Shown here piece after piece: positions 7,159 through 56,533 of a stretch of DNA of 64,000 nucleotides. Under the pieces are notes generated by a model. The model worked only from the letters and a program-made list of their open reading frames with translations. It was not told where the DNA came from and made no database searches. Location: positions 186,001-250,000 of IMG/VR virus record IMGVR_UViG_3300003322_000571; one strand, given 5' to 3'. Numbering within the stretch: the stretch's first letter is position 1; each line of letters opens with the position of its first letter. A program made the translations under genes and the position numbers.

Positions 7159-7947
7159 TTAACGATTCGCTTCCTCGCGTGTAACTGTCTGCAGATGCAT
7201 TTGCAGGTGGTAGACAATTTCCCACACGTTTGGAACGATTCGCTGCTTTTCCCAATCCATATAGATGCTGGAGAACGCGTTGATAATCTGCGTGATCTCT
7301 TGCATCTTACTTTGGTCGTGCCAGAAAAGTTTGACAATGTCAAACTTTTCTCGTTCCCACTTTTCCTTCATCTGACCGAGCGTCGGAGCAGTACCGAAGA
7401 GCAGGACGTTTTGCGGTGTTCCTGGCTCATGGATGATGTAGTACACCTCAACCTTTTGAGCTTCTTGTCGGACTTCAATTTTCTCGGTTACTTTGTTGCC
7501 GAGCCAGTGATTCCAGCTACGCCAATCACTATACACCAGCTCGGGACGAGCTGGAATGTCAGCAGGAAGATTACCTTCTACTTTACACCATTCGAACCAT
7601 TCGTTCGCGGAGCTGAGTTTCAGTTGATGAACAAAAAGCGTCGCTTCGAGCAGGGGCTTCCATTTCGTGCCGATTTTCTCGTTGAACTTGTTATTCGTTC
7701 CAAGGAAATCGTTCCAGGACGTCCACTCATCAACGTACACGCGGTACGGGTAGCGAGGAATTGCTTTCGGTTTATTGGCGTCGTGCCAGTCGAAGAATTT
7801 ACCGCGCGAAGGAATCATTTCACCGCGAACAAACTCCCTAGCCTCGTTCCAAGGTAGGTAGTTGTCGTTCTTGGGGCGACCGCGCCGCTTTTCTTCCTTC
7901 TTTACAGGTGCCTTAGGACCGTCATCAATTTCTACTTGTTCGCTCAT
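7159..7947 (-). CDS. Protein with AT-hook-like motif and two Trp-rich 'integrase repeat'-like units
   Basis: KRRGRPK, then two ~55-aa repeats of the form P..EA..F......S..(F/W)..W.......IP..P..VY..W.SW..(F/W)LG; no tyrosine-recombinase catalytic domain. Confidence 0.55.
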   Translation of the reverse strand: MSEQVEIDDGPKAPVKKEEKRRGRPKNDNYLPWNEAREFVRGEMIPSRGKFFDWHDANKPKAIPRYPYRVYVDEWTSWNDFLGTNNKFNEKIGTKWKPLLEATLFVHQLKLSSANEWFEWCKVEGNLPADIPARPELVYSDWRSWNHWLGNKVTEKIEVRQEAQKVEVYYIIHEPGTPQNVLLFGTAPTLGQMKEKWEREKFDIVKLFWHDQSKMQEITQIINAFSSIYMDWEKQRIVPNVWEIVYHLQMHLQTVTREEANR

Positions 7948-8540
7948 GGATTTTGCAAATCTTCAGTGGTTGTTGTGTACAGACCCAGATGGCGCAGCTG
8001 CGCTTCTCTCCATGTAGATGGAGCTTGTTGTCCTGTAAACACATCGGTATATGCTTGCTTCATTTGTGAAGCGCACAATTGCGGCGGAACTTTACCAACA
8101 CCAGTACCTAAGCCTGTGATAATGATACTCTTAAATTCCTTCTTGCGCATCTGCAAGAAAGCAGCGCGAGCCGCTAGGTAAGGATTGATCGTATTTGGTC
8201 CAAGAACCATCGGAACACGCATAGTTGGTGCCACGATTAGATATGGCCATAATTGATGATTTGTTAGTTGTGTAAATGCTTGTCCAACTAACAGTTCACC
8301 GTCATAGATGTCATTAATTACGCGCTTCACGTCGCGTTCGACGCTCTCCCCTAGCACTGAGGTTAGCAAATAATCAAAACCGCCATCCATAAATCCGTAG
8401 CTATTGGCTGGACTGACGATTGCTGTAGCTGAAACGGAAAATGCCGATTCAATGATTTTTATCTCAGGACAATCGCTGAACTGTTCAGCCCAGGCGTCGC
8501 GCAAGAGAGGCGACGTATCTGCTAAGAAGACTGTTCTCAT
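7944..8540 (-). CDS. Macrodomain (Appr-1''-p / ADP-ribose hydrolase family) protein
   Basis: AIVSPANSYGFMDGGFD and ITGLGTGVG are the canonical macrodomain ADP-ribose-binding loops. Confidence 0.9.
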   Translation of the reverse strand: MRTVFLADTSPLLRDAWAEQFSDCPEIKIIESAFSVSATAIVSPANSYGFMDGGFDYLLTSVLGESVERDVKRVINDIYDGELLVGQAFTQLTNHQLWPYLIVAPTMRVPMVLGPNTINPYLAARAAFLQMRKKEFKSIIITGLGTGVGKVPPQLCASQMKQAYTDVFTGQQAPSTWREAQLRHLGLYTTTTEDLQNP

Positions 8541-9151
8541 TGTGCTTTCTCAAAACGCTGATTAACAACTTCCCAGTTGATAATATCGAAGATTTGCTGA
8601 ACGTATGTCTTACGATCTGCAGCATATTGCTCGTCGTACAGGTAAGCATGTTCCCACACATCGATCGTCAAGATAGGGACATCTCCCGATTCAGAAAGAG
8701 GATTACGTGCATTAGGAGTCGTCTTAATCTTCAGATTGCTACCGTTCCAAATCAACCACGCCCAACCTGAACCGAATTGATCGACTGCTTTTTCTACAAA
8801 CTGCTTCTTGAATGTTTCAAACGATCCAAAAGCATCGTTGACTTCAGCTAGAATCGCTTCAGACGGTTTTCCAGATTGATTCTTAGGGCAGAGTGATTCA
8901 AAGTAAAAGACATGATTCCAAGCCTGTGCTGCGTTGTTGAACAGTTTCGAGTCCAACTTCATAATCATGTCGCGTGTGAGCAAGTCCGACAACTCAGTGA
9001 ACTTCTCGTATACTGTTCCCTTGATCAACTTGTTTGTTACATCAAAGTACTTTGCCATATGCTTGGAATAATGCAAGTCAACTTGTCGCTTTGACAAAAT
9101 TGGCTCTAGCGCATCGAGTGCATACGGAAGTTTTGGTTGTTCAAAAGCCAT
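8537..9151 (-). CDS. sodB: Fe/Mn superoxide dismutase, Fe-type signature
   Basis: LPY..DALEP, metal ligands in LHYSKH, AQAWNH and DVWEHAY, plus FGSGWAWL; AAQ at the specificity position indicates Fe-SOD. Confidence 0.92.
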   Translation of the reverse strand: MAFEQPKLPYALDALEPILSKRQVDLHYSKHMAKYFDVTNKLIKGTVYEKFTELSDLLTRDMIMKLDSKLFNNAAQAWNHVFYFESLCPKNQSGKPSEAILAEVNDAFGSFETFKKQFVEKAVDQFGSGWAWLIWNGSNLKIKTTPNARNPLSESGDVPILTIDVWEHAYLYDEQYAADRKTYVQQIFDIINWEVVNQRFEKAQ

Positions 9152-10223: not shown

Positions 10224-10799
10224 TTATATCACGTCAGCAGCGATCAAATGCAATTGAAGAACGATAGTCAAAGCATATGAAATAGCGTGAGACTTCTTGT
10301 AGTACGGCGTATCAACCTTCTGATACAACTCTTTTCTCAATGCCGACCGATCAGAACTTGCAATGTACCGATCGATCAAGTACCGCTTACCGGGCCGAAT
10401 CAATGCAATACAATCAGCGAGCTCTTCGACAGACTGTGGTCGAATGCGTTGCAGCATTTCAGCGTGCTTACTTAGTTGGAACAACTTCTTAACGACATTT
10501 TCGTCTAACAGCAGATCCCACTTCGGAGGATGTTTGATCAGTTGACGGATTTCCTCCTTCGACTCAAACATGTCAAGGACACTCAAGTGAAGAAAGTCGA
10601 TCTTGAAGTACCCCAACACTTCTGCCTCTTCATAGGGAATCGCCGCGAAACCTGTGACAGGATCAACGGGAATATCTTGAAAGTAGTGGCCACAATTGTG
10701 TTTGATCAGTTCACCGTTTCTTACTTGAGACGCAGCGACAGCTTCACGCATAATCTTGCGTGGATCAAACTTAGTAGGGAAGTCGATGTCAATATCCAT
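10224..10799 (-). CDS. dnaE: Miniature DNA polymerase III alpha (DnaE)-like catalytic fragment, C-terminal half
   Basis: Starts MDIDIDFP (DnaE PDxDxDF), then KHNCGHY (HAAG), KIDFLHLSVLD (KxDFLGL, third catalytic Asp), ALIRPG and YYKKSHAISY (YxFNKSHA.AY); only 191 aa. Confidence 0.8.
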   Translation of the reverse strand: MDIDIDFPTKFDPRKIMREAVAASQVRNGELIKHNCGHYFQDIPVDPVTGFAAIPYEEAEVLGYFKIDFLHLSVLDMFESKEEIRQLIKHPPKWDLLLDENVVKKLFQLSKHAEMLQRIRPQSVEELADCIALIRPGKRYLIDRYIASSDRSALRKELYQKVDTPYYKKSHAISYALTIVLQLHLIAADVI

Positions 10800-10830
10800 G
10801 CAGCATTATACGCTGCAACAGATCAACGGA

Positions 10831-14109: not shown

Positions 14110-15936
14110 TTAGTACTTGATAATGAAGCGCATCGACAAGTTAACAGGGCGTGTTTCAGAGCCAATCAAACCAACACGGTTCCAGTTTGCAGCACCGGAG
14201 TTTACACCGTCGGAAGGAATGTCCGCACCGTTGTTTGTGAAGCAATCGTAGTTGTCATTGTCAACACCGTTCATACGGAAACCTTGCAGACCGCCTACCG
14301 TACCGCTACCCCACTGACCAGCAGCCCCGTTGTTAATAGCTTCACGGAGCGCAACGTGTTTGTGAGCTTCAATTTGACCTTGTTGAACCGTACCAAGCGC
14401 ACGGCCAGGATCTGTACCAGCACCGTTAGACCAACCACGTGGGAACATACCACGGAAGTCAGGAACACGGAAAGTTGAAGCCGAACCAGCACCGTATGTT
14501 GTACCAATTGCAGCAAACAAGTTCGCGTATGTACCTGTACGGTTCAAATCCTGTCCTTCGCATTCAACCCAACCAGCTGGAACAGAGTTCACTGGCCACA
14601 TCACGATAGCACCTGTAGGTGTACCACTGTTGGCGGCAATGGCGGCGTCAACGTAAGCCTTGTTTGCTGCGTGAGCTGCCGCAGTTGGCGCATTAGGCAA
14701 CGTTACCTGGCTCGAACCACCGCTCAAAATGATCGAAGAATTTGCAAAGAGAGTGCCAGTTTGTGTCAATGTACCAGCAATCGAAACGTTACCAGAAATT
14801 GGACCACCAACTTTGTCGTACTTCGTACTCAAGTCCGGAACACTACCAGCAACAGCTGTGTCGACATACGCCTTGTTTGCTGCATCACCTGCAACAGTAG
14901 GAGTAGCGACGTTAACAATCTTATTGCCGCTCATGTTAACTTGACCGCTGTATACACCGCCTGTGGAAGTGATACCCGCGGAGAAGTTTGCACCACCGTT
15001 AACTTGCAACGTATTCAGCGTTGTAGATCCAGTAACTGTCAAGTTGCCAGAGATCGTGCCGCCTGACAAAGGCAAATAGTTGGCAACACCGCCTGCAACA
15101 GCACTGTCAACATATGTTTTGTTCGCAGCATCACTACCAACAGTTGCAAGCGCAAGATTCGTTACCTTGAACGAATTCATGTTGATAGGGCCATGAGCTG
15201 CAGGCGCATTGCCACCAATAGCCGGCCCAAGGATATCGTGCCAACGTGCAAGGCCTGAAGCAGCAGTATCAGCTGAGTAGACGCGCAGCACGCCAATAGA
15301 AGGCACGTACCAGAACATACCTGTTTGAGGTGCACTCGGAGGGTTTTCGCCGACGAATGTCGTCGTAGGAACAGACCAAACCGCCGCATTACCGTCACGG
15401 ATGCGGACAACTTGCTCGGGAACAACACCGGAACTGACAGGGTTAAAACCGGTACGCTGTGTGAACGAACGTGGCAACCATGCAGCAGGTTCGTAACGAC
15501 CCAATGAGTAATAGCCCCACAATCCAGTGATTGTTTGGCCGTCATATGTTCCCGTACCGTAGTAGTACTGACCGATTGTAGGTGTTGTTGGCGCTACAGT
15601 TGCAACGTTGCCGTTACCGTTCAACAACTCCCAGTTTGCCGTCGTGAAGTTCCAACGATACCAACCAGCGGACGTTGTACCGGAATTGTGGAAGTAGAGC
15701 TTTGTTTCAACCCAGATTTGGCCGGAAATAGCTGCGCTCGGAGGTGAGGCAGAAGCGAAATTTTCAGACAGACGGAGTAGGTCTTCGTCAACAGCTTCGC
15801 CCCACTCGAGAGCACCTCGACCATACAGGCGGAGCGTGCTGTTCGCAGCGGAACCACCAGGGCCGTTCAGTCCACCGGCAGGGATGGAAAAACTCGGGCG
15901 AAGTGGATCTGAATAGTCAATTTGGTATGCCGACAT
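14110..15936 (-). CDS. Tail fibre protein with C-terminal tail-collar domain
   Basis: PTGAIVMWPVNSVPAGWVECEGQ...LFAAIGTTYG...FRVPDFRGMFPRG and ETRPVNLSMRFIIKY are the tail-collar signature; N-terminus paralogous to 12245-14107. Confidence 0.85.
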   Translation of the reverse strand: MSAYQIDYSDPLRPSFSIPAGGLNGPGGSAANSTLRLYGRGALEWGEAVDEDLLRLSENFASASPPSAAISGQIWVETKLYFHNSGTTSAGWYRWNFTTANWELLNGNGNVATVAPTTPTIGQYYYGTGTYDGQTITGLWGYYSLGRYEPAAWLPRSFTQRTGFNPVSSGVVPEQVVRIRDGNAAVWSVPTTTFVGENPPSAPQTGMFWYVPSIGVLRVYSADTAASGLARWHDILGPAIGGNAPAAHGPINMNSFKVTNLALATVGSDAANKTYVDSAVAGGVANYLPLSGGTISGNLTVTGSTTLNTLQVNGGANFSAGITSTGGVYSGQVNMSGNKIVNVATPTVAGDAANKAYVDTAVAGSVPDLSTKYDKVGGPISGNVSIAGTLTQTGTLFANSSIILSGGSSQVTLPNAPTAAAHAANKAYVDAAIAANSGTPTGAIVMWPVNSVPAGWVECEGQDLNRTGTYANLFAAIGTTYGAGSASTFRVPDFRGMFPRGWSNGAGTDPGRALGTVQQGQIEAHKHVALREAINNGAAGQWGSGTVGGLQGFRMNGVDNDNYDCFTNNGADIPSDGVNSGAANWNRVGLIGSETRPVNLSMRFIIKY

Positions 15937-18553: not shown

Positions 18554-18713
18554 TTTGGTTTCCTTGTTCTGTAAATTGAGTACTTTTGTCGTAGTGTGCC
18601 ATCAGTTCTGCACGTGCTTGTTCGTACGTATACCCGTACGCTTCAGGACTGCGTTGCAGATCCTCAAGCCATTCTTCATACGTCAAACAATACCTTCCGC
18701 CATATTCGTTCAT
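18531..18713 (-). CDS. Small hypothetical protein (60 aa)
   Basis: TAATG overlap with the clamp loader stop at 18713. Confidence 0.55.
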   Translation of the reverse strand: MNEYGGRYCLTYEEWLEDLQRSPEAYGYTYEQARAELMAHYDKSTQFTEQGNQNGTSQEA

Positions 18714-19648
18714 TAGATCTGTCCCAGTTGAATGAACAATGCTGCTGCATTGATTTCAGGATCAGCAACGAGTGTGTGCTTATACAAATGTTCAGCGATC
18801 GCCATGATCCCAGCATCCCACTTGTCTCGGTCCTTATACTTCGGTGCTTTGTGGAGGTTCTCGTACAGGAAGCGGTACACATCTTCCCATTCATCAGGAG
18901 AAACTGTAGCACAAACCAGCTTACGAGCACCCGACCAGTCGTCTTCAGCAAGAAGGTCAAGTAACTGGAACTTGTAGTCACCACTAGCCGCAGTAGTATC
19001 CGGCTTAGTCAACACACCTTCAATCGTGTATTGCTCAACCTTGTTGACGATCTTACGAACGTCCGGATACGCGCTAGAGATGAAGTAATCGACAGTCTCG
19101 AGCTTGAACTTGACGCCTTCAGCAGCAAGGATGTTGATCACATATTCAGCAATGTCATCTTTGTTCGACGACTTGAACGTGAACTCCTGGCAGCGAGAAC
19201 GAATCGGAGGAATGATCTTGTTAACGTGGTTGCACGTCAGAATGAATCGAACACTGTCGCTGACCTCTTCCATAAACGCCTTGAGAGCGTTTTGTGCATC
19301 AGGAGTCAGTTTGTCCGCTTCTTCCAGGTGAATGATCTTGAAAGCACCCATCGCCATCGATAGAGCGAAGTTCTGAATCTTCTCACGGAAGACATCAATA
19401 CCACGCTCGGATGATGCGTTGATTTCAAGAACGTCAGCAGGATCGAGCTCACAAGCGTCGATTAGGATTCTCGCTAGAGTTGTCTTACCGGTGCCTTGCA
19501 CACCTGCGAAAATCAGCTGAGGGATCGATTTGTCATTGAGGCAGCGATTAACCGTAGCCTTCAAATTATCGTCTTGGAAGACGTATTGATCGATTGAGGT
19601 CGGTCGATACTTTTCGACCCAAATGTCGCGAATTTTACGTGTGGTCAT
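18713..19648 (-). CDS. Clamp loader large subunit (T4 gp44 / RFC AAA+ ATPase)
   Basis: WVEKYRP, Walker [21 protein letters not shown], Walker B-like LEEADKL, FILTCN and SRC motif; start placed at ATG 19648 after AAGGAG. Confidence 0.92.
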
Positions 19649-19710
19649 CCACAAACTCCTTATTGTGATGCCATTATAGCGATCACAATAAGGGTGGATC
19701 AACTAAAAGG

Positions 19711-21006: not shown

Positions 21007-21600
21007 TTATTCCCCTTGTAGCGTGTACGCGAGAATGTCTGTGTCTTTGATGAACGCAATTGTCTTACCGCGATACTTGATCGTATTGGTAAAATTGCTG
21101 TCATCGTAGAAGATTGTGGCACCAGTCAGATCGTCTACCGACGCTGCTTTTGCATCTGGGCCTACACTCAACACCTTACCAGATGCTGAGTTGTTCACAC
21201 CACCGACGATCATCAACAAACCGTGGCTGCGAACATTTTCGCGGGGTTGGATTTCAAACAGAATCCAGTTGGCGATTGGTTTGAGAGAGGAGCCATCGTT
21301 GTTACTTTCAACAGCGACGACTTCCTTCTCATCAGTCTTCCACAGCTTCTCGCCTTCGACTTTGACACCTTCAGTCCAGCGAAGAGCTGGAACAAGAGCC
21401 ATGTATCCTGGTTTCATCGTTTTGACATCTGGTCCAACGTATCGAACAGTTACAAAACGTGATTCCTTTGCGCTGGAATCGAACTGGTCACCTGCCAGAA
21501 TGATCCCACTATCTGTCTGTCCCTTAACAAACTCATTGCGAGTGTTGATTGCGTCGTTGAACTGGAAGAGAACAGAATTACCGAGTGCCGTGATTGTCAT
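21007..21600 (-). CDS. groES: Co-chaperonin with two tandem GroES (Cpn10) domains
   Basis: Domain 1: ITALGNSVLF...TDSGIILAG...VRYVGPDV...DEKEVVAV. Domain 2: LKPIANWILF...SHGLLMI...GKVLSVGPDA...IKDTDILAY. Each aligns by eye to GroES. Confidence 0.8.
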   Translation of the reverse strand: MTITALGNSVLFQFNDAINTRNEFVKGQTDSGIILAGDQFDSSAKESRFVTVRYVGPDVKTMKPGYMALVPALRWTEGVKVEGEKLWKTDEKEVVAVESNNDGSSLKPIANWILFEIQPRENVRSHGLLMIVGGVNNSASGKVLSVGPDAKAASVDDLTGATIFYDDSNFTNTIKYRGKTIAFIKDTDILAYTLQGE

Positions 21601-21844: not shown

Positions 21845-22408
21845 CTATTCATGTAAAAAGTCATTGATATCAAGACCGTACGCAAATGAGTCAACGTCGT
21901 GAACGCCAATAACGTACAAGACGTACGAAGACACGCTACTACCACGACCAACACCCCATACGGATTTGTTAGCAGTTAGTGTATTTATGATCCAAATTAT
22001 CGCTCGCAAAACGTCGAAAAGACCACGAGATTTGTAAGCTGCAATTTCTTCCAGCAATCTGTAGTCGCGTTTTTCGATTTCTTCGGCGGACAAATCTACG
22101 GTTAGTTTGATGTGTTTATCAAACAAGTATTCGACGATGTCGAGATACTTATATTCGTCCGGAAATGTCCATTGCTTTGATAATGGACGACATTGAGTTT
22201 TGACCTCAATTTTCTTATCTTGAGGTGCAAACTTATTGTAGTTGCGAACGTCCGGTGTCATTTCGTCAACGTACCGGACGTCATATTGATTCATATAGCG
22301 CAGCAATTTGGCTGGGTCAAACGATGAATCGCCGTCAAACCACAGCCGGCGGTCTTTCAATTCAGTACTACGCAAACGAGCTTTGGTAATTTCCACGTGA
22401 GGTATCAA
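21845..22408 (-). CDS. dnaE: DNA polymerase III alpha (DnaE)-like fragment, N-terminal half of the catalytic core
   Basis: C-terminus YRLLEEI...VWGVGRGSSVSSYVLYVIGVHDVDSFAYGLDINDFL matches DnaE RL..E...VGPGRGSAAGSLVAY.LGIT.IDP..Y.L.FERFL. Confidence 0.8.
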   Translation of the reverse strand: MIPHVEITKARLRSTELKDRRLWFDGDSSFDPAKLLRYMNQYDVRYVDEMTPDVRNYNKFAPQDKKIEVKTQCRPLSKQWTFPDEYKYLDIVEYLFDKHIKLTVDLSAEEIEKRDYRLLEEIAAYKSRGLFDVLRAIIWIINTLTANKSVWGVGRGSSVSSYVLYVIGVHDVDSFAYGLDINDFLHE

Positions 22409-23468: not shown

Positions 23469-25004
23469 TTACATTTGTTCAAGCATTTTCATTTGTTTAG
23501 CGTAGTCGACTTTGATCTTTTTGTACGGATACTGTGCTTCGTCATAGTAGTTCGTACGTGTCTTCAAGTGCTTCTTGCCATACTTCAAGTCACTGCAAAT
23601 GTCGTAGATATTGACAAAATTCTTGTCAGATGACTTACGCAATCCACGACCAACGGCCTGAATCACTCGGATGAACGACTTACCGATGTCAATGAAGAAC
23701 AAGTTGAAGATTCGGTTGATACTAAGCCCCGTACCAGCGATATGAACAGTTGCGAACACAACGAGGTCGTCTCGCTCCTTGAACAACTGGTAAATCTTGT
23801 CACGCTCTGACGACTTTTTAACATCAGTCCCGTTAACGAAGTAAGATCCAGGAATCAACGAAGCGAGCTTTCGGCCTAGAGCAACACTATCGACGAAGAT
23901 CATCGTATTGCCCTTCTTGTTATCCTGCTTGGCCAGGATCATCTCAGCAATCCACTCCATCCGTGTTTCATTACGGTGCGTGAATGACTTTTCAGCAGAG
24001 AAGTCAGGGAAATATCCATCTTTAAACTGTGTATATGTCGGAGGTTTACTTCCTTCAACGTCATTTTCACAGAACTGACGGTACTCAGCATTGAGGTCTT
24101 CTTCGAGCTGGATCACATCGATGTGAAGATTCGACAGGACACCCTCATCAATCAATTGACGTGCAGCGACAGTTTCTCGCACAGGACCGAGTGCAACATG
24201 CACAGCCATTAGATCAGAAGGATCCTTAGGCAAAGTACCCGTGACGCCAAATCTGTATAGAATGTTAGCTGAATGGTCTGTTAGAATCTTCTGCAGGACA
24301 TTTCCCTTTGCACCGTGACATTCGTCAACGAGAACAAGTTGGAATTGTTCAACGATCTTCGGGTTGTTCTTGAGTGCTTGCCATGTTGAAATCACATGCT
24401 GGTGGTTCAACGTTTTTGTTGTACCACTGTACTCACCAACGTCAAGTCCGTAGTGAACGTAGTCCTTCTTTGTCTGACGAATCAAGTCCTGGTTCGGGAC
24501 AATCGTCAATGTTTTGATTCCAAGCTTACCGTATGAATCAACAAGTGCAGTACAAATGATCGTCTTGCCTGCGCCCGTTGACGCGAGAAGGATCCCGTAT
24601 CCAGATTCAATAAGAGCGTTGATACCAGACACTTGGTAATGTCGTAGAACTGTCGGCTCACCAGTATCAGCGTGTGGAACATGAGCATAGAACTGATCCG
24701 TAATCAACGGCGGATCAGCTTTCTCTCCCGTACGAAGGTCTTCAAGTGTAATTTTGTACCCAAGCTTAACGATGATGGGAATCAATTCGTCAAGCAGATA
24801 CATGTACGTCTTCCCGTTCATCGAGAAGTAGTGGATCTTACCGTCCCATTGTCCCAGCTTGTAGCGTGGATTAAAGAAGTAGTTCGGTGCAGGAACTGCA
24901 TACTTATTGTATAGCATCTCGTAGTGATCTCCGTGGAGACCAACTACGACAGCAGTAACTTCGTTCAACAGGCGGATTTTACATTCGCTCTTTTTGTTCA
25001 TCAT
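23469..25004 (-). CDS. uvsW: SF2 DNA helicase, UvsW-like
   Basis: Walker A STGAGKT, DECH box, GVTGT motif III, TGLSINRI and IQAVGRGLR motif VI; follows uvsY as in T4-like phages. Confidence 0.9.
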   Translation of the reverse strand: MMNKKSECKIRLLNEVTAVVVGLHGDHYEMLYNKYAVPAPNYFFNPRYKLGQWDGKIHYFSMNGKTYMYLLDELIPIIVKLGYKITLEDLRTGEKADPPLITDQFYAHVPHADTGEPTVLRHYQVSGINALIESGYGILLASTGAGKTIICTALVDSYGKLGIKTLTIVPNQDLIRQTKKDYVHYGLDVGEYSGTTKTLNHQHVISTWQALKNNPKIVEQFQLVLVDECHGAKGNVLQKILTDHSANILYRFGVTGTLPKDPSDLMAVHVALGPVRETVAARQLIDEGVLSNLHIDVIQLEEDLNAEYRQFCENDVEGSKPPTYTQFKDGYFPDFSAEKSFTHRNETRMEWIAEMILAKQDNKKGNTMIFVDSVALGRKLASLIPGSYFVNGTDVKKSSERDKIYQLFKERDDLVVFATVHIAGTGLSINRIFNLFFIDIGKSFIRVIQAVGRGLRKSSDKNFVNIYDICSDLKYGKKHLKTRTNYYDEAQYPYKKIKVDYAKQMKMLEQM

Positions 25005-25459: not shown

Positions 25460-25974
25460 TGTTTTGTCTCCAGAGTGGTCTGTTGGAAGAACAGCATCTG
25501 TCGAATCTGATCTGTTGTAAGCGCTCCTGGATCAAAACTGACTTTGATCGGCTCTGCTTCTTTCTTTGGCTCTGGCTTTTTCAGTTTGTCGCCAAGCAAC
25601 TCCGTAATGTACTGTTTAACGTCGTTAGCTGGTTGGAATGCAACTTCGATCGGAACGTTAAACCGAATATTACGTTCGACATAAGCTGCGTCGTCAGCAC
25701 GACCAGTAGCTGTCGCTTTAAGAAACTCAGATTCATTTTTGGTTGGGTCGTACGAGATGCGAACAACAAGCGAAATTGCTGAGTCAATGATGTCAACAGA
25801 CACCCAATGCAATTGATCAGTTGGAAGACCGAGCAACTCGACGATCGCAAGTAGCATCGTCGGCGCAAGGTGTTCAGCAATTTGCTTGTTGTAGTCAAGG
25901 TGGATCTGGTCTCGTTCCTCTACCAATGACAACAGTTCTTCGATTTGTTTTAGTTTTTGTTCGTTGTGTTCCAC
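25456..25974 (-). CDS. Hypothetical protein
   Basis: 172-aa ORF with overlapping start/stop coupling on both sides. Confidence 0.7.
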   Translation of the reverse strand: MEHNEQKLKQIEELLSLVEERDQIHLDYNKQIAEHLAPTMLLAIVELLGLPTDQLHWVSVDIIDSAISLVVRISYDPTKNESEFLKATATGRADDAAYVERNIRFNVPIEVAFQPANDVKQYITELLGDKLKKPEPKKEAEPIKVSFDPGALTTDQIRQMLFFQQTTLETKQ

Positions 25975-27017
25975 ACGATATCCTGTGTTTCCATGACCAG
26001 TTTGGCAGCTAATTTGATGTCTGGCTTCTTAGGTAGAGTCGTCTTAGGGTACAACTCATCTCTTACCTTAGCATCCATCATTTCAGCGTACTCAACAACT
26101 TCCTCATAGGTCCAGGAACCGTTTCGGATAGCCAAAAGCTCTTGAGCATCGGGTCTAAGCACAACAATCTCGCCCGTTTCAAGTGCTTCAACACCCATAC
26201 GAAGTAGGCGGACAAGATGCATTGCATGCTTCGTGTCGTAACCAAACTTCTCTTCTAGCTCGCTTCGCTTTTCATTGCGATTTTTCTTCCAGTCCCAGTA
26301 GTGCGACCACGTTTCTTTAGCGGTTTCATACACAGAACGGTTGAACTTGATAATGAACAACGGAACGCCTAGTTCGTGACTATCACCTTCATAGTCGGAA
26401 TTAAGAGCGCCGGTTTCATGATTGAACGGAGAATAACCTTTCGCTGGGAATAATCCGTATACATCACTACTAAACGGAACAAGCCGGTGGTCGTTCGCAT
26501 AATCGCGTAAGTCCACTTTAAACGTCTTTACGCCTGTGAAGTTATGAACAAGACTGATGTAATCAATATGTTTTGGACGGTCAGGAGACTGCGGATTGTT
26601 GATCCACTTGTTGTGCCCTTTGATTCGCTTTAGCTGTGACAGCGCGTATCCGCTAGTCGTAAACGCGATTTTGCTCGACAGCAAAGCGTGGCGATGCGCA
26701 CGCAAGTGTTCGTATGCAGGCGTTGTGTGCGTGATACTCGATTCGTCAACCCAAAGTGTTTCAATAACATTGGGATTACAGTCGAGCGAGAGCTTCATGA
26801 ACTGGAACAGTTCATACAACTTTGTGTCTTCTTCCGTCGTATCATCGACTTCCTTAATTGTGTAAAAGGGAGTACGAATGTTGACAGGGTCAGCTACGAA
26901 AATACCGCGGAAATCGGTGTCAGACGTTGGCAATGACGTGCCATACGCTTTTGAACCTGCGTAGTGCTTGACGAGCAAGTTCTCTTTCATTAGTTCTTGT
27001 GGTGTTCTAATATTCAT
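25950..27017 (-). CDS. Pol-beta superfamily nucleotidyltransferase (RlaP / Nuc-transf-like)
   Basis: AGSKAYGTSLPTSDTDFRGIF (GS...DxD) and C-terminal GYDTKHAMHLVRLL; start placed at 27017 after GGGGAG. Confidence 0.85.
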   Translation of the reverse strand: MNIRTPQELMKENLLVKHYAGSKAYGTSLPTSDTDFRGIFVADPVNIRTPFYTIKEVDDTTEEDTKLYELFQFMKLSLDCNPNVIETLWVDESSITHTTPAYEHLRAHRHALLSSKIAFTTSGYALSQLKRIKGHNKWINNPQSPDRPKHIDYISLVHNFTGVKTFKVDLRDYANDHRLVPFSSDVYGLFPAKGYSPFNHETGALNSDYEGDSHELGVPLFIIKFNRSVYETAKETWSHYWDWKKNRNEKRSELEEKFGYDTKHAMHLVRLLRMGVEALETGEIVVLRPDAQELLAIRNGSWTYEEVVEYAEMMDAKVRDELYPKTTLPKKPDIKLAAKLVMETQDIVWNTTNKN

Positions 27018-27035
27018 TATTGTTCTCCCCAACGG

Positions 27036-27085: not shown

Positions 27086-27427
27086 TTACATTTCGATGTC
27101 TGCGAGATTAACGCTGACTACTGTATGGACGCCGTCCCTGTACACATGTTCCCACATCGAAGCTCCTTGCTCAAGTTGAGCAAATCGAATCTCACCGTTT
27201 ACCTTGTGACGAAGTAGGACATCCTTGACAGAGTCATCCCACAAATGAGCATCGATGTGTTCATCGTGGTTTTCATCAAAGTGCAGATACCGTTTTCCGT
27301 CGTGTTCGAACGTGTAGTGAGTACCGTAATAATTACTGTCTTCTTCACCAATCAACGCTTCGAGCTCAAGAGCGCATTGCTCCGTCAATTCGACAGAGCT
27401 ACAGATCAATTCGACGTGCCAACTCAT
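27086..27427 (-). CDS. Hypothetical protein
   Basis: 113-aa acidic ORF coupled (TAATG) to the uvsX stop. Confidence 0.7.
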   Translation of the reverse strand: MSWHVELICSSVELTEQCALELEALIGEEDSNYYGTHYTFEHDGKRYLHFDENHDEHIDAHLWDDSVKDVLLRHKVNGEIRFAQLEQGASMWEHVYRDGVHTVVSVNLADIEM

Positions 27428-28530
27428 TACTCGTCCCCTTCAGCGGCTTCTGCATCAGCCTTTGCCTTGCGGCGACCTTTGGTTTCAGCCTTTGTCTCTG
27501 TTTCAGTATCGATCTCTACATTCGTATCAAGGAATGCAGCTTGTGCTTCAAGCGCTGCGAGGATTCGTGGAACGTATGGTTCCATATCTTTCTCGTAGAA
27601 CTTCTCGTCCGTACCAGCGAGTTGCAAGTACGATCCGCGTTTCTCAAGGATACCAGCCTTAACAGCGACATCCTTAAGACCAGACGTTGGATCCATGCCG
27701 TCTTCGTATGGCACTTCAATTTCAACCTTCTGGAATGGCTTAGTGAAGCGGGTCTTGTAACCTTCACAAATCATACGAACACCAGCAAAGTCGCCGACCT
27801 TCGCATCCTTTGATTCGTCCTTCAGCTTACGCTTTTGGATCAGGATAATTTGTGAGCAAGCATACTTAACAGCATCAGAAACGATCCACAGGCCTTCACC
27901 GTTCATAACGTCTTGGTTCTTGTACACTTGAGATGTACAAATCATCGCAACGTTCAGGTTCTTAATTGCCTGGACGAATGTACGAAGCATAGCCTTCAAC
28001 TGCTTGTTCTTCTGACCTTGGTCACCCTTCGTGTCACCTTTTGCAAAGTGTTCACGTTCGGTTTCCGTCATCAACATGTCAAGTGAGTCGATCAGGATTA
28101 GAACTTGCTGCGCACCTTCGCCTTCACCTTCTTGCGCTTTGTAGGCTTTCAAGAATGATGAAACGATCTTCGTCACTTGCGGAATTGTTGTAACACCAAC
28201 GTACTTGTAGTTTTCGTTGACATTGACACCAATCTTCGACATGAATTCGTCATCAAGAGCGTTTTCACTGTCAATAACAAGAATGTATGCACCTTCGCGT
28301 TGAGCTGCTGCAACGAGGTTAGCAGAGATGAACGACTTACCTGCTCCTGATGGACCAGCCAAGTCAGTGATACGGCCTTGAGGAATACCTTTCAGAGCAC
28401 TGCCTGAAATGATCTTGTTGAGGACGTAGTTACCGGTAGAATACCAATAACGTGGGGGGAGAGATGACGTACCAATGTCGTCAATCTTTTCGAGGTCCTT
28501 CTCGAAATCTTTCAAAAAGTCAAATGCCAT
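27427..28530 (-). CDS. uvsX: RecA-like recombinase UvsX
   Basis: STGNYVLNKIISG, Walker A GPSGAGKS, IDSENALD, Walker B LILIDSL and KTRFTKPF; start at 28530 after GGAG. Confidence 0.92.
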   Translation of the reverse strand: MAFDFLKDFEKDLEKIDDIGTSSLPPRYWYSTGNYVLNKIISGSALKGIPQGRITDLAGPSGAGKSFISANLVAAAQREGAYILVIDSENALDDEFMSKIGVNVNENYKYVGVTTIPQVTKIVSSFLKAYKAQEGEGEGAQQVLILIDSLDMLMTETEREHFAKGDTKGDQGQKNKQLKAMLRTFVQAIKNLNVAMICTSQVYKNQDVMNGEGLWIVSDAVKYACSQIILIQKRKLKDESKDAKVGDFAGVRMICEGYKTRFTKPFQKVEIEVPYEDGMDPTSGLKDVAVKAGILEKRGSYLQLAGTDEKFYEKDMEPYVPRILAALEAQAAFLDTNVEIDTETETKAETKGRRKAKADAEAAEGDE

Positions 28531-28548
28531 ATGTTTCTCCAATATAGA

Positions 28549-35143: not shown

Positions 35144-36268
35144 TTACACCATGTTGTGGTTCGACGTCGTGATCTTGTCGAATTCACCGATCAGAGGCAT
35201 TTGAAGCGACTTATACTGCTGACGAACAGCCGCTTCCGGAACAACTTTATCACCACGCGTCTTCTGACGGTCGATCAGCGTTTGCAGCTTGATCGGCATC
35301 AGCACAGCTTCCGTGAAGAAACCATGCTTCTTCAGCACACGAAGATACCAGCCACGACGCTTCGCACTGAGGTTCGTGTTGTCGACGTACAGGATTGCGT
35401 TGTCTTCAGCCGCTTGCTTTGCCATAGCATGGAATCGAGCGTTAGCACGCGATTCAAACGACTTGTCTTCCACAGACCCTTGGAAAGCCTTGTTGTAATC
35501 AGTCGGATGGTAGAACTCGTGACGAAGCAGATCGAGCGAAAACACGACCACTTCAACACCAGCTTCCTTTGCCTTGTCACGCAGCTGCTTCAGGTACGTC
35601 GACTTACCAGCACCAGAGGGAGCGATCGGGAAGACCGCATGAGGCGCTTGAAGGTTAACGCTGCGAGGCGACAGATTTTCAACGATCACGTTAAAGTCCT
35701 CAACCCACTTGTCAGAGCGGGCAGTGTTAATATCCCAGTCATCAGACGTACGTCCGTACTGGTCGGCGAGCAGCGAACGGGTGTACACATCGTGACCATA
35801 CAGTTTCGAAGTGTAACCAATCGATTCAAGCTTTTCTTTGTCTTCAATCTTCCACGGCATGTGGTACTCGATCATCCAACTGATCCGCGAGATTTCTTCT
35901 GCAGTGAATCCGCTGTACTTATTCGCAGCGTAATCTTCAAACAGACGAGCAGACAGCAGTTCGTGACCGTGATACGCACGGTACTTGCCACGCGTTTCGC
36001 TGTACTTTTCGATCTCAGCAGGCGGCTTACCGATGTCATGGAAGATGCACTCAACCGCGCCAAGATAGTCGTCGCGAGTCCATTCATCATCAGCCTTGAT
36101 CAGACCAACACGGCGACAGTAATCGTTCAGCACCATTTCGGTGTGAACGAGCACGTTTGCTTCCCGGTGCCACGGAGAACCTTCGACAGTGCGTGCCATC
36201 TTCTGGAACGCAGGAGTGTCCTTCATTGCGTCAAACAGGAGGTGAGCTTTCGCTTTGTAGTTGGTCAT
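35144..36268 (-). CDS. HD-domain phosphohydrolase fused to a polynucleotide-kinase-like P-loop domain
   Basis: SPWHREANVLVHT...IFHDIGKP...YHGHE (HD domain of CCA-enzyme type); APSGAGKST, VDNTNL..KRR and R..TRGDKVVPE..V..QY (PNK/AAA_33). Confidence 0.8.
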   Translation of the reverse strand: MTNYKAKAHLLFDAMKDTPAFQKMARTVEGSPWHREANVLVHTEMVLNDYCRRVGLIKADDEWTRDDYLGAVECIFHDIGKPPAEIEKYSETRGKYRAYHGHELLSARLFEDYAANKYSGFTAEEISRISWMIEYHMPWKIEDKEKLESIGYTSKLYGHDVYTRSLLADQYGRTSDDWDINTARSDKWVEDFNVIVENLSPRSVNLQAPHAVFPIAPSGAGKSTYLKQLRDKAKEAGVEVVVFSLDLLRHEFYHPTDYNKAFQGSVEDKSFESRANARFHAMAKQAAEDNAILYVDNTNLSAKRRGWYLRVLKKHGFFTEAVLMPIKLQTLIDRQKTRGDKVVPEAAVRQQYKSLQMPLIGEFDKITTSNHNMV

Positions 36269-36270
36269 TT

Positions 36271-36327
36271 GGGTTACCTAGTTATGAATTGACACGCACT
36301 ATAACTAGGTAACCCTAAAAATGTCAA
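36271..36327 (-). promoter_or_regulatory. Sigma70-like promoter overlapped by a 15-bp perfect inverted repeat
   Basis: Minus strand TTGACA (36322-36327), 18 bp, TATAGT (36298-36303); GGGTTACCTAGTTAT (36271-36285) pairs with ATAACTAGGTAACCC (36301-36315). Confidence 0.7.
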
Positions 36328-37904
36328 CCGAAAACCATTCCGCCACCAAGATCGTTTTCATCCCAGTCAGAAACGTCTGACGACGAATCGTCGAAATAAG
36401 CATGTGCGTACAATTTGTCGTATGCTTCTTGGTCAAAAGAAGAGATTTCCTCAAGCAACCTAACAGCAATGACAGAAGCCATAATCAAGTCGTCCGTTGC
36501 ACCAACTTTAGCAGCGTAAGATCCACCTTTACGGACGAAGTTCTTCAACTCATGCAACAAAGCCTTGGACTTGATGTGCAAGCTATTACGTTCAAGCATT
36601 TCTTTCAATGCAAGGCATCCCTTGATCTTTGTCTTACCAGTTGTTGTCATTCCCTTGCGCTTTTGGCCAGCTTCGGAAACAAACTCAGCGATATCTGGTG
36701 GATCATCGTCTGCTTCCATTAGAGCAACAATAGCTTCACCAACACCGTTTACTTCGACAGAGTAGTATACGTTCGCTTCGGCTTTTTCGTAGATCCGCAA
36801 CATCTTCTTTAACATATGATAGCCAGTGACAGACGACGCTGTGTTTGATCTAAACTCAGCTACCTGCTCCATCGAAGGGAATTCATATGACACAATTGTT
36901 GTGTAGTCTGAACCAGTACCTGTCGACGGGTCCATACCAATTAGATATACAGTTCCCGCGGTTGGCATCTTGTAGAAGACAATCTCTCCTGCAGTAGCAA
37001 CAGGTTTTCCTGTTACTTTACTGTTTAAGTTCTCAAGGACAATTGTATCAATTAGCAGCGGATCGTTCGAAATGAACTTGCATTCATATTCTTGCTGCCA
37101 ACGGATTTCACCAATTTTAGCAGTTTCTTCACGCTTGAACTTCTCATCGCGGCCAGGTGGTTCGTCCCACTTGACTTCAATTGGTGCGAAACCGTTGATA
37201 CCAACACCGGCAAGTGCAGGATCAGGGTTCGGGTTATTTGCGCCACGCCAAATCTGTGCAAAACGGTTTGTATCACCGTTGGGAGTAGAACAGATAATGC
37301 AACTACCACCGGTCGCAAGCGTTGGTGAAACGGAAGTCCAGAATTCTTCAGCAATTGTGTCACGTACGAATGCAAATTCGTCGAGGAACATCAAAGAGAT
37401 AGAAAGACCACGACCTGTGTTTTCTGTTGTAGCTTGAGAAATAATACGGCTACCATTATCAAACCCAACGCTGTGTTTATTCCATCCGTCGTCTGGTAGA
37501 CCTGGTTTAATCCAGTGCGGAAGACGTTCGTACATAAATCGAACGCGGTTAATCATTTCCATAGCGTTGTCGTTCTTGTTAGAAGCGATCAACACAGTCT
37601 TCTCAAAGTGGAACATAGCGAACCACAGCAGATACGCTCCAGCGATCCAAGATTTCCCAATCTGACGCGGAGCTAGGGCAATTGACAAACGATTGTTTTC
37701 AAATACCTTGATGATTCGGCGTTGGTAAGCACGAAGCTTGAACGGAGCAGAACCTTGGACAGGGTGTTGCAGTTGACAATATGTGTCAATAAAGTACTCA
37801 GCAGATTGCATGCACTTTGAAATCTCATGCACTTGCTCTGCTGTATATTCGTGCTGTTCATTAGCACGTTTTAGAAAGGGATTACGTGGCGCTGCCATAA
37901 ACAC
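36324..37904 (-). CDS. terL: Terminase large subunit (T4 gp17-like)
   Basis: LAPRQIGKS Walker A, FLDEFAF Walker B, CSTPNG, GMDPSTGTGSDY nuclease motif and TDDLIMA. Confidence 0.95.
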   Translation of the reverse strand: MFMAAPRNPFLKRANEQHEYTAEQVHEISKCMQSAEYFIDTYCQLQHPVQGSAPFKLRAYQRRIIKVFENNRLSIALAPRQIGKSWIAGAYLLWFAMFHFEKTVLIASNKNDNAMEMINRVRFMYERLPHWIKPGLPDDGWNKHSVGFDNGSRIISQATTENTGRGLSISLMFLDEFAFVRDTIAEEFWTSVSPTLATGGSCIICSTPNGDTNRFAQIWRGANNPNPDPALAGVGINGFAPIEVKWDEPPGRDEKFKREETAKIGEIRWQQEYECKFISNDPLLIDTIVLENLNSKVTGKPVATAGEIVFYKMPTAGTVYLIGMDPSTGTGSDYTTIVSYEFPSMEQVAEFRSNTASSVTGYHMLKKMLRIYEKAEANVYYSVEVNGVGEAIVALMEADDDPPDIAEFVSEAGQKRKGMTTTGKTKIKGCLALKEMLERNSLHIKSKALLHELKNFVRKGGSYAAKVGATDDLIMASVIAVRLLEEISSFDQEAYDKLYAHAYFDDSSSDVSDWDENDLGGGMVFG

Positions 37905-55111: not shown

Positions 55112-56533
55112 TTAAGCGAAGTTGAAGTTCGAGACATTGATTTTGCCATAGTAGTCTGCGCTGTTACCGAGCGACGTTTCCGTAGCCGTGAACGCTGTCT
55201 TACCGTAGCGAGTCATCATCGATACAACTGGCTGGAACGTGACTGGGTTGATAACAACGCCAGAGCTCATCAGCGGGATGTATGGGCAGTAGAAGTAGCC
55301 CGTGTCAGTTTCGCCATTACCACCTTTGTAACCAACGAGGATAACGTCGTTAACTGCTGCACCGAGACCGGACACTTGGTTCCACAGGTAGCTGTAGACC
55401 TTGATCGTACCATTCAACGTACCAACCAACATTGTGTTGTTAGGACCCTTGAACGAACCTGCAACAGCTGGTGCGAACACCGACTTAGCAGCGGACTGGA
55501 GGATCGAGACAACCATTGGGCTGACAACGATGAAGTTACCTGGACCACGACGTGTCTTACGAGCAATTTCGTTACACACTGCGTTGATCACGATACCGAG
55601 GTTCGCGAAACGGTCACCGAGGTATGCTGGCTGGTACTGTGGGCCGAGGCCGATAGTAGCGTAGTCGTATGTACCGACCGTGCCTGCCAAAGCGAGCAAG
55701 TCAGACAAGATTTCGCTGTCAATTTCCTGAACGATTTCAGCCGAAACAACTTGGCTGAGTTCGCTCTCGAGGTCGAGACCGTGTTGGCTCTTCAAGTCTT
55801 GCATAGCTTCGACTGTCCAACCTGCTTGCAGCTTACGCGTGCCAGCTTCAACAGCCTGCGATACAACTTCGAGCTTAACCTTACGGCCGCCAGAACCTTC
55901 AATGAACGAACCAGAACCACCGTACAGACGACCGGAAACTTGTTGACCAAGACCGTTGCTGTATGGGCCGAAGTACGTTGTGTCATACGAAGGGAGGCTT
56001 GAAGGCCATGCACCACGCGATGCAGCGCCGTCGATGTCACCAACTGGGTTAGCAGCGATGCCAGATGCGCCTGGATCTTGTGCGAGCGGTGTGCCTACAA
56101 CCGTACCAGCTGCGCCAGAGTAGAACTGACGGAGAACTGGGTTGTTACCGAACATTTCGGCGTTAGCAGCGATCGTACCGTCCGAACCGTTAGCCGTCCA
56201 AGGGTTACCTGGAGTGCCAGCAGCTGGAACTTGAACGCCTTCACCGTACTTGTAGCGCATCGTGTAAACGAGGCCAACTGGACCTTGCATTGGCTGAACA
56301 CCAACGATTTCCGTTGCGATCGTACCAGGGATGATACGGCGGATCATTGGGATCAGGATCTTGCGGAAGCCAGCAACGTCGTGAGCAGCAACAGCGCCAG
56401 CAGCAGCTGTTTCAGACAAGATGTGCTGCTTTTGGTTTTCCAAAAGCGTACCAACGATTTGGCGCTTAGTTTGGTCGAGGTCGTCCAGGAGCGTTTCCTT
56501 GACTTCTGACCAATTTTCAAACAATTCGTTCAT
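55112..56533 (-). CDS. Major capsid protein (T4 gp23-like)
   Basis: LIPMIRRIIP, EIVGVQPMQGPVGL, AGTRKLQAGWTVEAMQDL, EIVQEIDSEI, FYCPYIPL and TFQP...MTRYG. Confidence 0.95.
   Translation of the reverse strand: MNELFENWSEVKETLLDDLDQTKRQIVGTLLENQKQHILSETAAAGAVAAHDVAGFRKILIPMIRRIIPGTIATEIVGVQPMQGPVGLVYTMRYKYGEGVQVPAAGTPGNPWTANGSDGTIAANAEMFGNNPVLRQFYSGAAGTVVGTPLAQDPGASGIAANPVGDIDGAASRGAWPSSLPSYDTTYFGPYSNGLGQQVSGRLYGGSGSFIEGSGGRKVKLEVVSQAVEAGTRKLQAGWTVEAMQDLKSQHGLDLESELSQVVSAEIVQEIDSEILSDLLALAGTVGTYDYATIGLGPQYQPAYLGDRFANLGIVINAVCNEIARKTRRGPGNFIVVSPMVVSILQSAAKSVFAPAVAGSFKGPNNTMLVGTLNGTIKVYSYLWNQVSGLGAAVNDVILVGYKGGNGETDTGYFYCPYIPLMSSGVVINPVTFQPVVSMMTRYGKTAFTATETSLGNSADYYGKINVSNFNFA

What the first reader, a model, noticed from the sequence alone, without database searches (positions are those of the whole stretch)
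10224..10799. Miniature split DnaE-like polymerase: catalytic C-half beginning at the DIDID motif
Seen: a 191-aa ORF starts at MDIDIDF and keeps, in DnaE order, the HxxG, KxDFL (third catalytic Asp), ALIRPG and KSHA.xY motifs, with the intervening finger regions deleted. Its apparent partner (21845-22408, about 11 kb away) ends at the segment that immediately precedes PDxDxDF in DnaE. Established: bacterial DnaE is ~1,100+ aa with PHP, clamp-binding and OB domains. Inference: two ~190-aa proteins reconstitute a stripped C-family polymerase without inteins. In a T4-like replisome it may be repurposed, for example as a primase, a repair or protein-primed nucleotidyltransferase, or an anti-defence enzyme. 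Homologs in related jumbo phages may already be annotated as 'Pol III alpha'; I cannot check whether their function has been tested.
Basis: partly seen in the sequence, partly recalled or inferred. Interest (0 to 1): 0.85.

Follow-up and report, generated by a model that had tools for sequence, protein, structure and literature searches.

The report
Split minimal Pol III polymerase, already described
Two small genes 11 kb apart in this uncultured jumbo phage encode the two halves of a stripped-down bacterial-type (DnaE-like) DNA polymerase core, a split enzyme already predicted from sequence in 2021, for which I found no functional test in the held paper library.

Summary
On the minus strand, 10224-10799 (191 aa) and 21845-22396/22408 (183/187 aa) are real, conserved genes. 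Sequence profiles and confident AlphaFold2 models match only Pol III alpha (DnaE).

The N-half carries the GRGS phosphate-binding loop and ends about 7 residues before the DxD motif. The C-half starts at M-DIDID and carries all three catalytic Asp plus the RPG and KSHAxxY finger motifs. All of these residues are invariant in homologs.

The break point is fixed across hundreds of diverged lineages. Both halves co-occur in about 100 cultured jumbo phages, from 0.76 kb to more than 200 kb apart. There are no inteins and no sign of decay.

Iyer et al. 2021 (PMC7824862) described this "minimal, split DNA polymerase III alpha" of group 2.2 jumbo phages, which accompanies a family B polymerase. I found no functional test in the literature.

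New here:
- The break position is nearly constant.
- Rare natural single-chain fusions exist: two in N-to-C order and one circularly permuted singleton. Two of them sit beside a replicase or helicase gene.

The primase, protein-priming and anti-defence ideas have no support.

Verdict: a new member of a known kind, of moderate interest.

The parts
10224..10799 (-). C-subunit of the split minimal Pol III alpha (191 aa): metal-binding palm strands plus a truncated fingers domain
   Evidence: ORF. PF17657 and phrog_11778 at 4e-67. AF2 pLDDT 92.8. Foldseek finds only Pol III alpha. 1811 homolog clusters of about 190 aa.
10782..10796 (-). DIDID motif (residues 2-6): the first two catalytic Asp, directly after the start codon
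   Evidence: Translation. D2, D4 and D6 are invariant. 96 of 98 diverged representatives have DxDx[DE] within the first 12 residues.
10596..10604 (-). K66-I-D68: the third catalytic Asp and its neighbouring Lys (Taq alpha K616/D618)
   Evidence: Alignment to 3e0d. Invariant.
10386..10397 (-). RPGK finger motif (R135, P136, K138)
   Evidence: Aligned to the LYRPGP segment of Taq alpha. Invariant.
10275..10295 (-). KSHAISY finger motif (H171, Y175)
   Evidence: Weak, individually non-significant alignment to Taq alpha 809-823, FNKSHAAAY. H171 and Y175 are invariant.
21845..22396 (-). N-subunit of the split minimal Pol III alpha (183 aa from the GTG at 22396; the mechanical ORF starts at the TTG at 22408)
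   Evidence: ORF. PF07733 and phrog_11127 at 3e-37. AF2 pLDDT 90.2. Foldseek finds only Pol III alpha. 2713 homolog clusters. Start inferred from relatives.
21938..21955 (-). GVGRGS loop (residues 148-153), the phosphate-binding G-S motif of the Pol-beta-like fold (E. coli alpha G359-S364)
   Evidence: Ungapped alignment to 2hnh residues 320-393. Invariant.

Best explanation
The two genes encode the two subunits of the phage-specific 'minimal split Pol III alpha' described by Iyer et al. 2021.

How the parts fit together:
- The N-subunit supplies the helices and the G-R-G-S loop that binds the triphosphate of the incoming nucleotide.
- The C-subunit supplies the strand with the DxD pair, the strand with Lys and the third Asp, and a shortened fingers domain that keeps the RPG and KSHAxxY motifs.
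- The break falls inside the Pol-beta-like catalytic core, between the GS-loop helix and the DxD strand. A complete active site therefore exists only when the two chains associate non-covalently.
- The enzyme lacks the PHP, thumb, clamp-binding, OB and tau-binding parts of bacterial DnaE.

Most likely it is a short-patch, low-processivity, DNA-templated DNA polymerase. It would work beside the phage's family B replicase in recombination-dependent replication or in gap filling and repair.

Shown: homology, conservation of catalytic residues, a fixed break point, co-occurrence, and natural fusions.

Inferred: heterodimer formation, catalytic activity, DNA as the template, and the role in the cell.
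For: Homology to DnaE on both sides of the break:
- Sequence and profile matches.
- Structure matches.

Invariant active-site residues are divided between the two chains.

The break point is fixed:
- N-halves end D-[IV]-D-D-F-L-H-[ED] and C-halves begin M-D-[IV]-D-[IL]-D.
- 96 of 98 representatives, each from a different 50%-identity cluster, have DxDx[DE] within their first 12 residues.
- All 80 IMG/VR loci carry a stand-alone C-half.

Co-occurrence:
- Genus counts nearly match. Escherichia 34/34, Erwinia 8/8, Xanthomonas 4/4 and Yersinia 4/4. Klebsiella is 11 (C) against 10 (N), and Pseudomonas 11 (C) against 14 (N); the N-half query also picks up ordinary dnaE genes of other phages.
- Both halves are also present in a 141-kb Alishewanella phage.
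- The same layout is found in XacN1.

Natural single-chain fusions:
- P0317 is N-to-C. DnaE models align straight through its junction, residues 92-206 to TIGR00594 302-417.
- P0360 is N-to-C.
- P0377 is permuted, C-to-N.

Replication context:
- In the window the N-half lies near UvsW, a RecA/UvsX-like gene and a clamp loader. N-half and clamp-loader synteny is kept in GAP32.
- The fusions overlap a PF03090 replicase gene and an AAA_25 helicase-like gene.

The published prediction is the same.
Against: - I found no biochemical or genetic test in the literature.
- No model of the pair could be made, so complementarity of the two halves is inferred and not shown.
- There is no thumb, and about two thirds of the fingers are missing. 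Stable primer-template binding is therefore uncertain.
- No clamp-binding motif was identified.
- The family B polymerase was seen only in the relative XacN1 and in the literature, not inside this 64-kb window.
- The permuted fusion is a singleton on a 3.4-kb contig.
Confidence: 0.72

Rival explanations
1. The pair is an active nucleotidyltransferase but not a templated DNA polymerase. It could instead be a terminal transferase, a primer-synthesising enzyme, a protein-priming enzyme, or a maker of a nucleotide signal or DNA modification.
For: - The thumb, most of the fingers, and the clamp-binding and OB domains are absent, judged from length and secondary structure.
- A complete family B replicase with an exonuclease domain already exists in relatives.
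- The Pol-beta-like superfamily includes many non-polymerase transferases (established knowledge).
Against: - The retained finger motifs RPG and KSHAxxY are DnaE-specific and invariant.
- The only structural relatives are replicative Pol III alpha enzymes.
- There is no PADLOC match.
- The fused forms sit with replicase or helicase genes.
Confidence: 0.17
2. The two proteins are catalytically dead relics kept for a structural or regulatory role in the replisome.
For: Activity has never been shown, and the domain loss is extreme.
Against: All three catalytic Asp, the Lys, the GRGS loop and the finger motifs are invariant across diverged lineages. Dead enzymes usually lose such residues.
Confidence: 0.05
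3. The halves are fragments of one broken full-length dnaE (a pseudogene or an assembly artefact), or they are joined after translation by a split intein.
For: Cyanobacterial DnaE is known to be split and rejoined by a split intein (established knowledge).
Against: - The same two roughly 190-aa genes occur in about 100 cultured phage genomes and in thousands of metagenome clusters.
- The N-half stops 7 residues before the DxD position, and the C-half starts with Met directly on DxD. This leaves no room for intein fragments.
- Neither ORF has an intein family hit in Pfam.
- No PHP or OB fragments flank either gene.
Confidence: 0.01

Closest known systems
Minimal split DNA polymerase III alpha of group 2.2 jumbo phages (Iyer, Anantharaman, Krishnan, Burroughs, Aravind 2021, Viruses 13:63, PMC7824862)
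   Same: - An N-terminal NTP-binding unit and a C-terminal Mg- and template-binding unit are separate proteins from distant genes.
- There are no other Pol III domains.
- The genome type is the same, with UvsW, a gp23-type capsid and a clamp loader.
- The same PHROG families are hit, and the cultured relatives are the same (XacN1, Atu_ph07, GAP32, RaK2, 121Q).
   Different: Nothing essential. This is an uncultured relative, 57% (C-half) and 40% (N-half) identical to the nearest cultured phage. The fixed break point, the rare fused and permuted single-chain forms, and the presence in a 141-kb phage do not appear in the passages of that paper I retrieved.
Bacterial DnaE / Pol III alpha (for example E. 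coli 2hnh, Taq 2hpi and 3e0d)
   Same: The palm fold, the catalytic Asp triad plus Lys, the GRGS loop and the RPG and KSHAxxY finger motifs are shared, in the same order.
   Different: - About 375 aa in two chains, against about 1160 aa in one.
- No PHP, thumb, beta-clamp motif, OB fold or tau-binding domain.
- NCBIfam scores of 21-24 bits against cutoffs of 434-1806.
Compact one-piece phage DnaE-like polymerases (450-650 aa; for example Cellulophaga phage phiST 525 aa, Pseudomonas phage PA5 466 aa, and the 563-aa ORF of L074)
   Same: They are phage-borne C-family cores, shorter than cellular DnaE. The L074 ORF, the one checked here, has no PHP domain.
   Different: They are a single chain with a full-length PF07733 domain and larger fingers. 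The window's enzyme is smaller and split.
Cyanobacterial split-intein DnaE
   Same: A C-family polymerase is encoded by two separate genes.
   Different: There the halves carry intein fragments and are spliced into one full-length chain, and the split lies elsewhere. Here there are no intein sequences, and the break lies inside the catalytic palm.
Split multisubunit RNA polymerases of phiKZ-like jumbo phages
   Same: A core nucleic-acid polymerase is divided into several separately encoded polypeptides in jumbo phages.
   Different: The fold and function are unrelated, and the phage group is different.

Membership tests
Split minimal Pol III alpha (Iyer et al. 2021) | Stand-alone N-unit homologous to the NTP-binding part of the Pol III alpha palm | tested here: met
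   PF07733 above its cutoff. Profile residues 109-182 align to E. coli alpha 320-393. The GRGS loop is invariant.
Split minimal Pol III alpha (Iyer et al. 2021) | Stand-alone C-unit with the Mg-chelating Asp residues and the template-binding fingers remnant | tested here: met
   D2, D4 and D68 are invariant. PF17657 is above its cutoff. There is an alignment to Taq alpha.
Split minimal Pol III alpha (Iyer et al. 2021) | The two units are encoded by separate, distant genes | tested here: met
   They are 11 kb apart on the same strand, and 0.76 kb to more than 200 kb apart in relatives.
Split minimal Pol III alpha (Iyer et al. 2021) | No other Pol III alpha domains (PHP, OB and others) | tested here: met
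   Pfam finds only the palm and finger pieces in the two ORFs, and no PHP or OB in the neighbours scanned.
Split minimal Pol III alpha (Iyer et al. 2021) | The genome also has a classic family B polymerase (group 2.2 replication set) | tested here: inconclusive
   UvsW, a clamp loader, RecA/UvsX, a T4-type terminase and a gp23-type head protein are in the window. No PolB was found among the window ORFs scanned. PolB is confirmed in the relative XacN1.
Bacterial DnaE / Pol III alpha | Curated whole-protein score for DnaE models | tested here: not met
   21.5 and 24.1 bits against a TIGR00594 cutoff of 434.
Bacterial DnaE / Pol III alpha | N-terminal PHP domain | tested here: not met
   No PHP match in either ORF or in the neighbours.
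Bacterial DnaE / Pol III alpha | Catalytic Asp triad in a Pol-beta-like palm | tested here: met
   The triad is present (D2, D4, D68), but the palm is shared between two chains.
Bacterial DnaE / Pol III alpha | Thumb, beta-clamp-binding motif and OB fold | tested here: not met
   Only 60 residues, mostly strands, lie between the DxD motif and K66, against about 150 in DnaE. The protein ends about 16 residues after KSHAxxY.
Split-intein DnaE | Intein N- and C-fragments flanking the break | tested here: not met
   The N-half ends at the residue aligned to E. coli 393. The C-half begins with Met directly on DxD. There is no spare sequence and no intein family hit.
Known anti-phage defence or counter-defence proteins (PADLOC) | Match to any defence-system model | tested here: not met
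   No hits for either half or for the fusions.

The most novel reading that the evidence does not exclude
The roughly 340-400-residue minimal C-family core may be a self-sufficient replicative DNA polymerase.

In small mobile elements it would occur as one chain, in either domain order. There it is translationally coupled to a replicase/primase or to a helicase, and it could serve as the element's polymerase.

In jumbo phages the same core is kept as two separately encoded subunits. Active enzyme would then form only when both are made. In this window the N-half lies in the replication cluster and the C-half lies behind tail-fibre genes. That arrangement would give a temporally gated second polymerase.
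Probability: 0.2. Interest if true: 0.7.

Novelty: new member of a known kind. Interest (0 to 1): 0.4.

Why it matters
If the pair is active, it would be by far the smallest C-family polymerase. It would also be a rare case of a polymerase whose catalytic palm is assembled from two polypeptides.

That bears on three questions:
- How little of DnaE is needed for catalysis.
- How Pol III evolved.
- Why T4-like jumbo phages keep a second polymerase beside their family B replicase.

The prediction was published in 2021, and I found no functional test of it. The value of this window is therefore mainly as one more well-conserved example. The natural fusions could make handy single-chain constructs for biochemistry.

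Tried and rejected
- **Single-sequence search of the C-half against PDB.** It gave only chance hits, such as thioredoxin reductase at E 0.06. Profiles were needed.
- **Literature searches for experimental work.** Searches on the split enzyme found nothing beyond Iyer et al. and genome notes that list 'DNA polymerase III' genes.
- **Anti-defence idea.** No PADLOC hit.
- **Corroborating the permuted fusion P0377.** No relatives were found in the 5.8-billion-protein set, so it stays a singleton. Its GC content is even along the contig.
- **Tree of C-halves, to ask whether fusions are basal or derived.** The three fusions fall in three separate places. P0360 sits in a 96% SH-aLRT clade of stand-alone C-halves, which suggests secondary fusion. 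However, 53 of 102 forks are unresolved, and the root rests on one very long outgroup branch.
- **Hairpin over the C-half start codon.** z = -1.85, and 10 of 200 shuffles fold as well, so it is not significant.
- **The C-terminal 'QLHLI' as a beta-clamp-binding motif.** I considered this and set it aside. It lies in the long helix that continues from KSHAxxY, as in DnaE. This is sequence reasoning only and was not tested.
- **tRNA scan of the window.** None found.

Full report
**1. Observation**

Both ORFs are real and lie on the minus strand. The C-half is 10224-10799, 191 aa, and begins MDIDIDF. The partner is 21845-22408, 187 aa from a TTG, and ends ...WGVGRGSSVSSYVLYVIGVHDVDSFAYGLDINDFLHE.

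Close relatives of the partner begin M-x-x-T-K/R-A-R-L-R-S-T. The real start is therefore probably the GTG at 22396, giving 183 aa. N-half residue numbers in this report count from that GTG. The motif coordinates were checked by translation. The two genes are 11,045 nt apart.

**2. Homology to DnaE**

- Pfam places the N-half in PF07733 (30.2 bits, cutoff 23.9) and the C-half in PF17657 (27 bits, cutoff 22).
- PHROGs places them in phrog_11127 (3e-37) and phrog_11778 (4e-67), both labelled DNA polymerase.
- A profile of 76 N-half homologs aligns residues 109-182 without gaps to E. coli alpha 320-393. R151-G152-S153 therefore fall on R362-G363-S364, and the protein ends seven residues before the DxD position.
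- A profile of 76 C-half homologs aligns residues 59-159 to Taq alpha 609-722, so K66/D68 correspond to K616/D618. A weaker stretch, not significant on its own, aligns 162-176 to Taq 809-823 (KSHAAAY). About 85 finger residues between these stretches are missing, and so is everything after the KSHAxxY helix.
- The AlphaFold2 models are confident (pLDDT 92.8 and 90.2). Their only meaningful matches in the PDB and in BFVD are Pol III alpha proteins, at probability 1.00.
- Only 60 residues, mostly beta strands, separate the DxD motif from K66. DnaE has about 150 there, including the helical thumb. The thumb is therefore absent. This is an inference and the published domain borders.

**3. Conservation and the break point**

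The large protein collection holds 1811 C-half clusters and 2713 N-half clusters, almost all of 176-203 aa.

D2, D4, D6, K66, D68, H71, R135, P136, K138, H171 and Y175 are invariant in the C-half. W147, G148, G150, R151, G152 and S153 are invariant in the N-half.

The break is fixed. N-halves end D-[IV]-D-D-F-L-H-[ED] and C-halves begin M-D-[IV]-D-[IL]-D. An exhaustive profile search of 1.84 billion representatives found 624 relatives. Of the 98 full-length ones among the best 150, 96 carry DxDx[DE] within their first 12 residues. In 80 IMG/VR loci, every C-half is a stand-alone ORF of at most 232 codons from stop to stop.

This excludes a broken dnaE and leaves no room for intein fragments.

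**4. Co-occurrence**

The C-half is found in 97 cultured phage records. The more divergent N-half needed a second query, taken from GAP32. That query found it in the same genera with nearly the same counts:

| Genus | C-half records | N-half records |
|---|---|---|
| Escherichia | 34 | 34 |
| Erwinia | 8 | 8 |
| Xanthomonas | 4 | 4 |
| Yersinia | 4 | 4 |
| Klebsiella | 11 | 10 |
| Pseudomonas | 11 | 14 |

The N-half query also picks up ordinary dnaE genes of other phages, which accounts for the extra Pseudomonas records.

The distance between the two genes ranges widely:
- 0.76 kb in L007.
- About 11 kb in this window and in Alishewanella phage Slicko01.
- 15 kb in XacN1.
- About 31 kb in 121Q and 34 kb in GAP32.
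- More than 180 kb in Atu_ph07 and Phosso.

Slicko01 is only 141 kb, so the pair is not confined to jumbo genomes.

Synteny of the N-half with a GroES-like gene and the clamp loader is shared by the window and GAP32.

**5. Context**

The window mixes T4-like replication and recombination genes with structural genes.

| Group | Gene | Coordinates |
|---|---|---|
| Replication and recombination | UvsW | 23469-25004 |
| Replication and recombination | RecA/UvsX-like | 27427-28542 |
| Replication and recombination | AAA+ clamp loader | 18713-19702 |
| Structural | Tail fibre | 14110-15936 |
| Structural | Terminase | 36324-37904 |
| Structural | Sheath | 41806-43533 |
| Structural | Major head protein | 55112-56533 |
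| Structural | Portal | 58683-60362 |

No family B polymerase was found among the window ORFs I scanned. XacN1, one of the two closest cultured relatives, has one with an exonuclease domain. The literature reports the same for the group.

**6. Prior knowledge**

Iyer et al. [quoted passage not shown] They propose that it cooperates with the family B enzyme in synthesis of one strand or in repair.

Many GenBank and RefSeq records already label one or both halves as DNA polymerase III alpha. I found no experimental test of the function.

**7. What seems to be added here**

Three of the 150 best representatives are natural single-chain versions.

- **P0317** (375 aa) joins an N-half to a C-half through ...FIKDN-KEGIYNIA-DFDID.... 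DnaE models align straight through the junction.
- **P0360** (336 aa, a two-member cluster) joins an N-half core to a C-half. It overlaps the stop codon of a PF03090 replicase gene.
- **P0377** (398 aa) has the order reversed, with the C-half at 6-194 and the N-half core at 240-312. It overlaps a downstream AAA_25 helicase-like gene. It is a singleton on a 3.4-kb contig, so it needs confirmation.

These fusions are gene-fusion evidence that the two halves act as one enzyme. Their neighbours point to DNA replication.

In a weakly resolved tree, the three fusions fall in three separate places among stand-alone C-halves. Fusion therefore looks secondary and repeated.

**8. Mechanism and verdict**

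The best-supported reading is an obligate two-chain C-family nucleotidyltransferase. Its active site is completed across the subunit interface. It most likely acts as a low-processivity DNA polymerase auxiliary to the family B replicase.

- Heterodimer formation, activity and the nature of the template are inferred.
- Alternative transferase activities cannot be excluded.
- A dead relic is unlikely, given the invariant catalytic residues.
- Pseudogene and intein explanations are refuted.

It is not a DnaE ortholog. It scores 21-24 bits against cutoffs of 434 or more, and it has no PHP, thumb, clamp motif or OB fold. It does meet every testable feature of the published split minimal Pol III alpha.

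Novelty: a new member of a known kind. Interest is moderate, because I found no functional test and the natural fusions offer an easy experimental entry.

Noticed in passing
L074:8884-10575 (+), with L074:2144-2734 (+): One 14-kb IMG/VR contig carries a split-type stand-alone C-half. About 6 kb downstream, after a Toprim protein, a DnaB-like helicase and an HhH-GPD glycosylase, it carries an unsplit, PHP-less, compact DnaE-like gene of 563 aa. That gene has a full PF07733 domain at 1e-43 and a fingers domain. A split-type half and a one-piece compact C-family polymerase can therefore coexist.
   Followed up: partly
L086:871-2067 (P0377); L085:1066-2193 (P0317); L087:3171-4181 (P0360): These are natural single-chain versions of the split enzyme. 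Two are in N-to-C order and one is circularly permuted, C-to-N. Two of them overlap a neighbouring PF03090 replicase gene or an AAA_25 helicase-like gene. All are on short metagenome contigs, and the permuted one is a singleton.
   Followed up: yes
window 10799-10817 (-): The C-half has no Shine-Dalgarno sequence. Its ATG sits at the 3' foot of a perfect 6-bp hairpin, TGCAGC-gtataat-GCTGCA, whose loop reads TATAAT. The fold is not significantly better than shuffles, at z = -1.85.
   Followed up: partly
window 21845-22396 (-), residues 11-24 of the N-half: The first 75 or so residues of the N-half have no DnaE counterpart. They carry a motif that is invariant within this clade, R-x-L-W-F-D-G-D-S-S, and looser in distant clades (R-h-h-x-x-x-G). 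The region is missing from the fusion P0360 and did not align in PA5oct-like phages. It could be an interface or accessory element.
   Followed up: partly
window 25950-27032 (-): A second Pol-beta-fold nucleotidyltransferase of the RlaP RNA-repair family (PF10127, 5e-11) lies between UvsW and the RecA/UvsX-like gene. An HD plus AAA_33 kinase-like protein lies at 35144-36268. Together they suggest an RNA-repair set.
   Followed up: no
window 7944-9151 (-): A macro-domain protein (7944-8540) lies next to an ORF (8537-9151) whose translation looks like an Fe/Mn superoxide dismutase. The two overlap by 4 nt and lie about 1 kb downstream of the C-half. The macro domain was seen. The SOD identity was judged by eye from the translation and was not scanned.
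   Followed up: no
L001:22868-23461 (XacN1 ORF223): In XacN1 a stand-alone DnaQ/RNase T-type 3'-5' exonuclease, annotated as Pol III epsilon, lies 2.3 kb downstream of the C-half. It could be a proofreading partner. No equivalent was recognised among the window ORFs scanned near the C-half.
   Followed up: partly
window 21007-21600 (-): A 197-aa protein has a Cpn10/GroES-like C-terminal half (PF00166, 7e-7), about twice the length of GroES. It sits between the N-half and the clamp loader. GAP32 has a 'head morphogenesis' gene in the same position.
   Followed up: no
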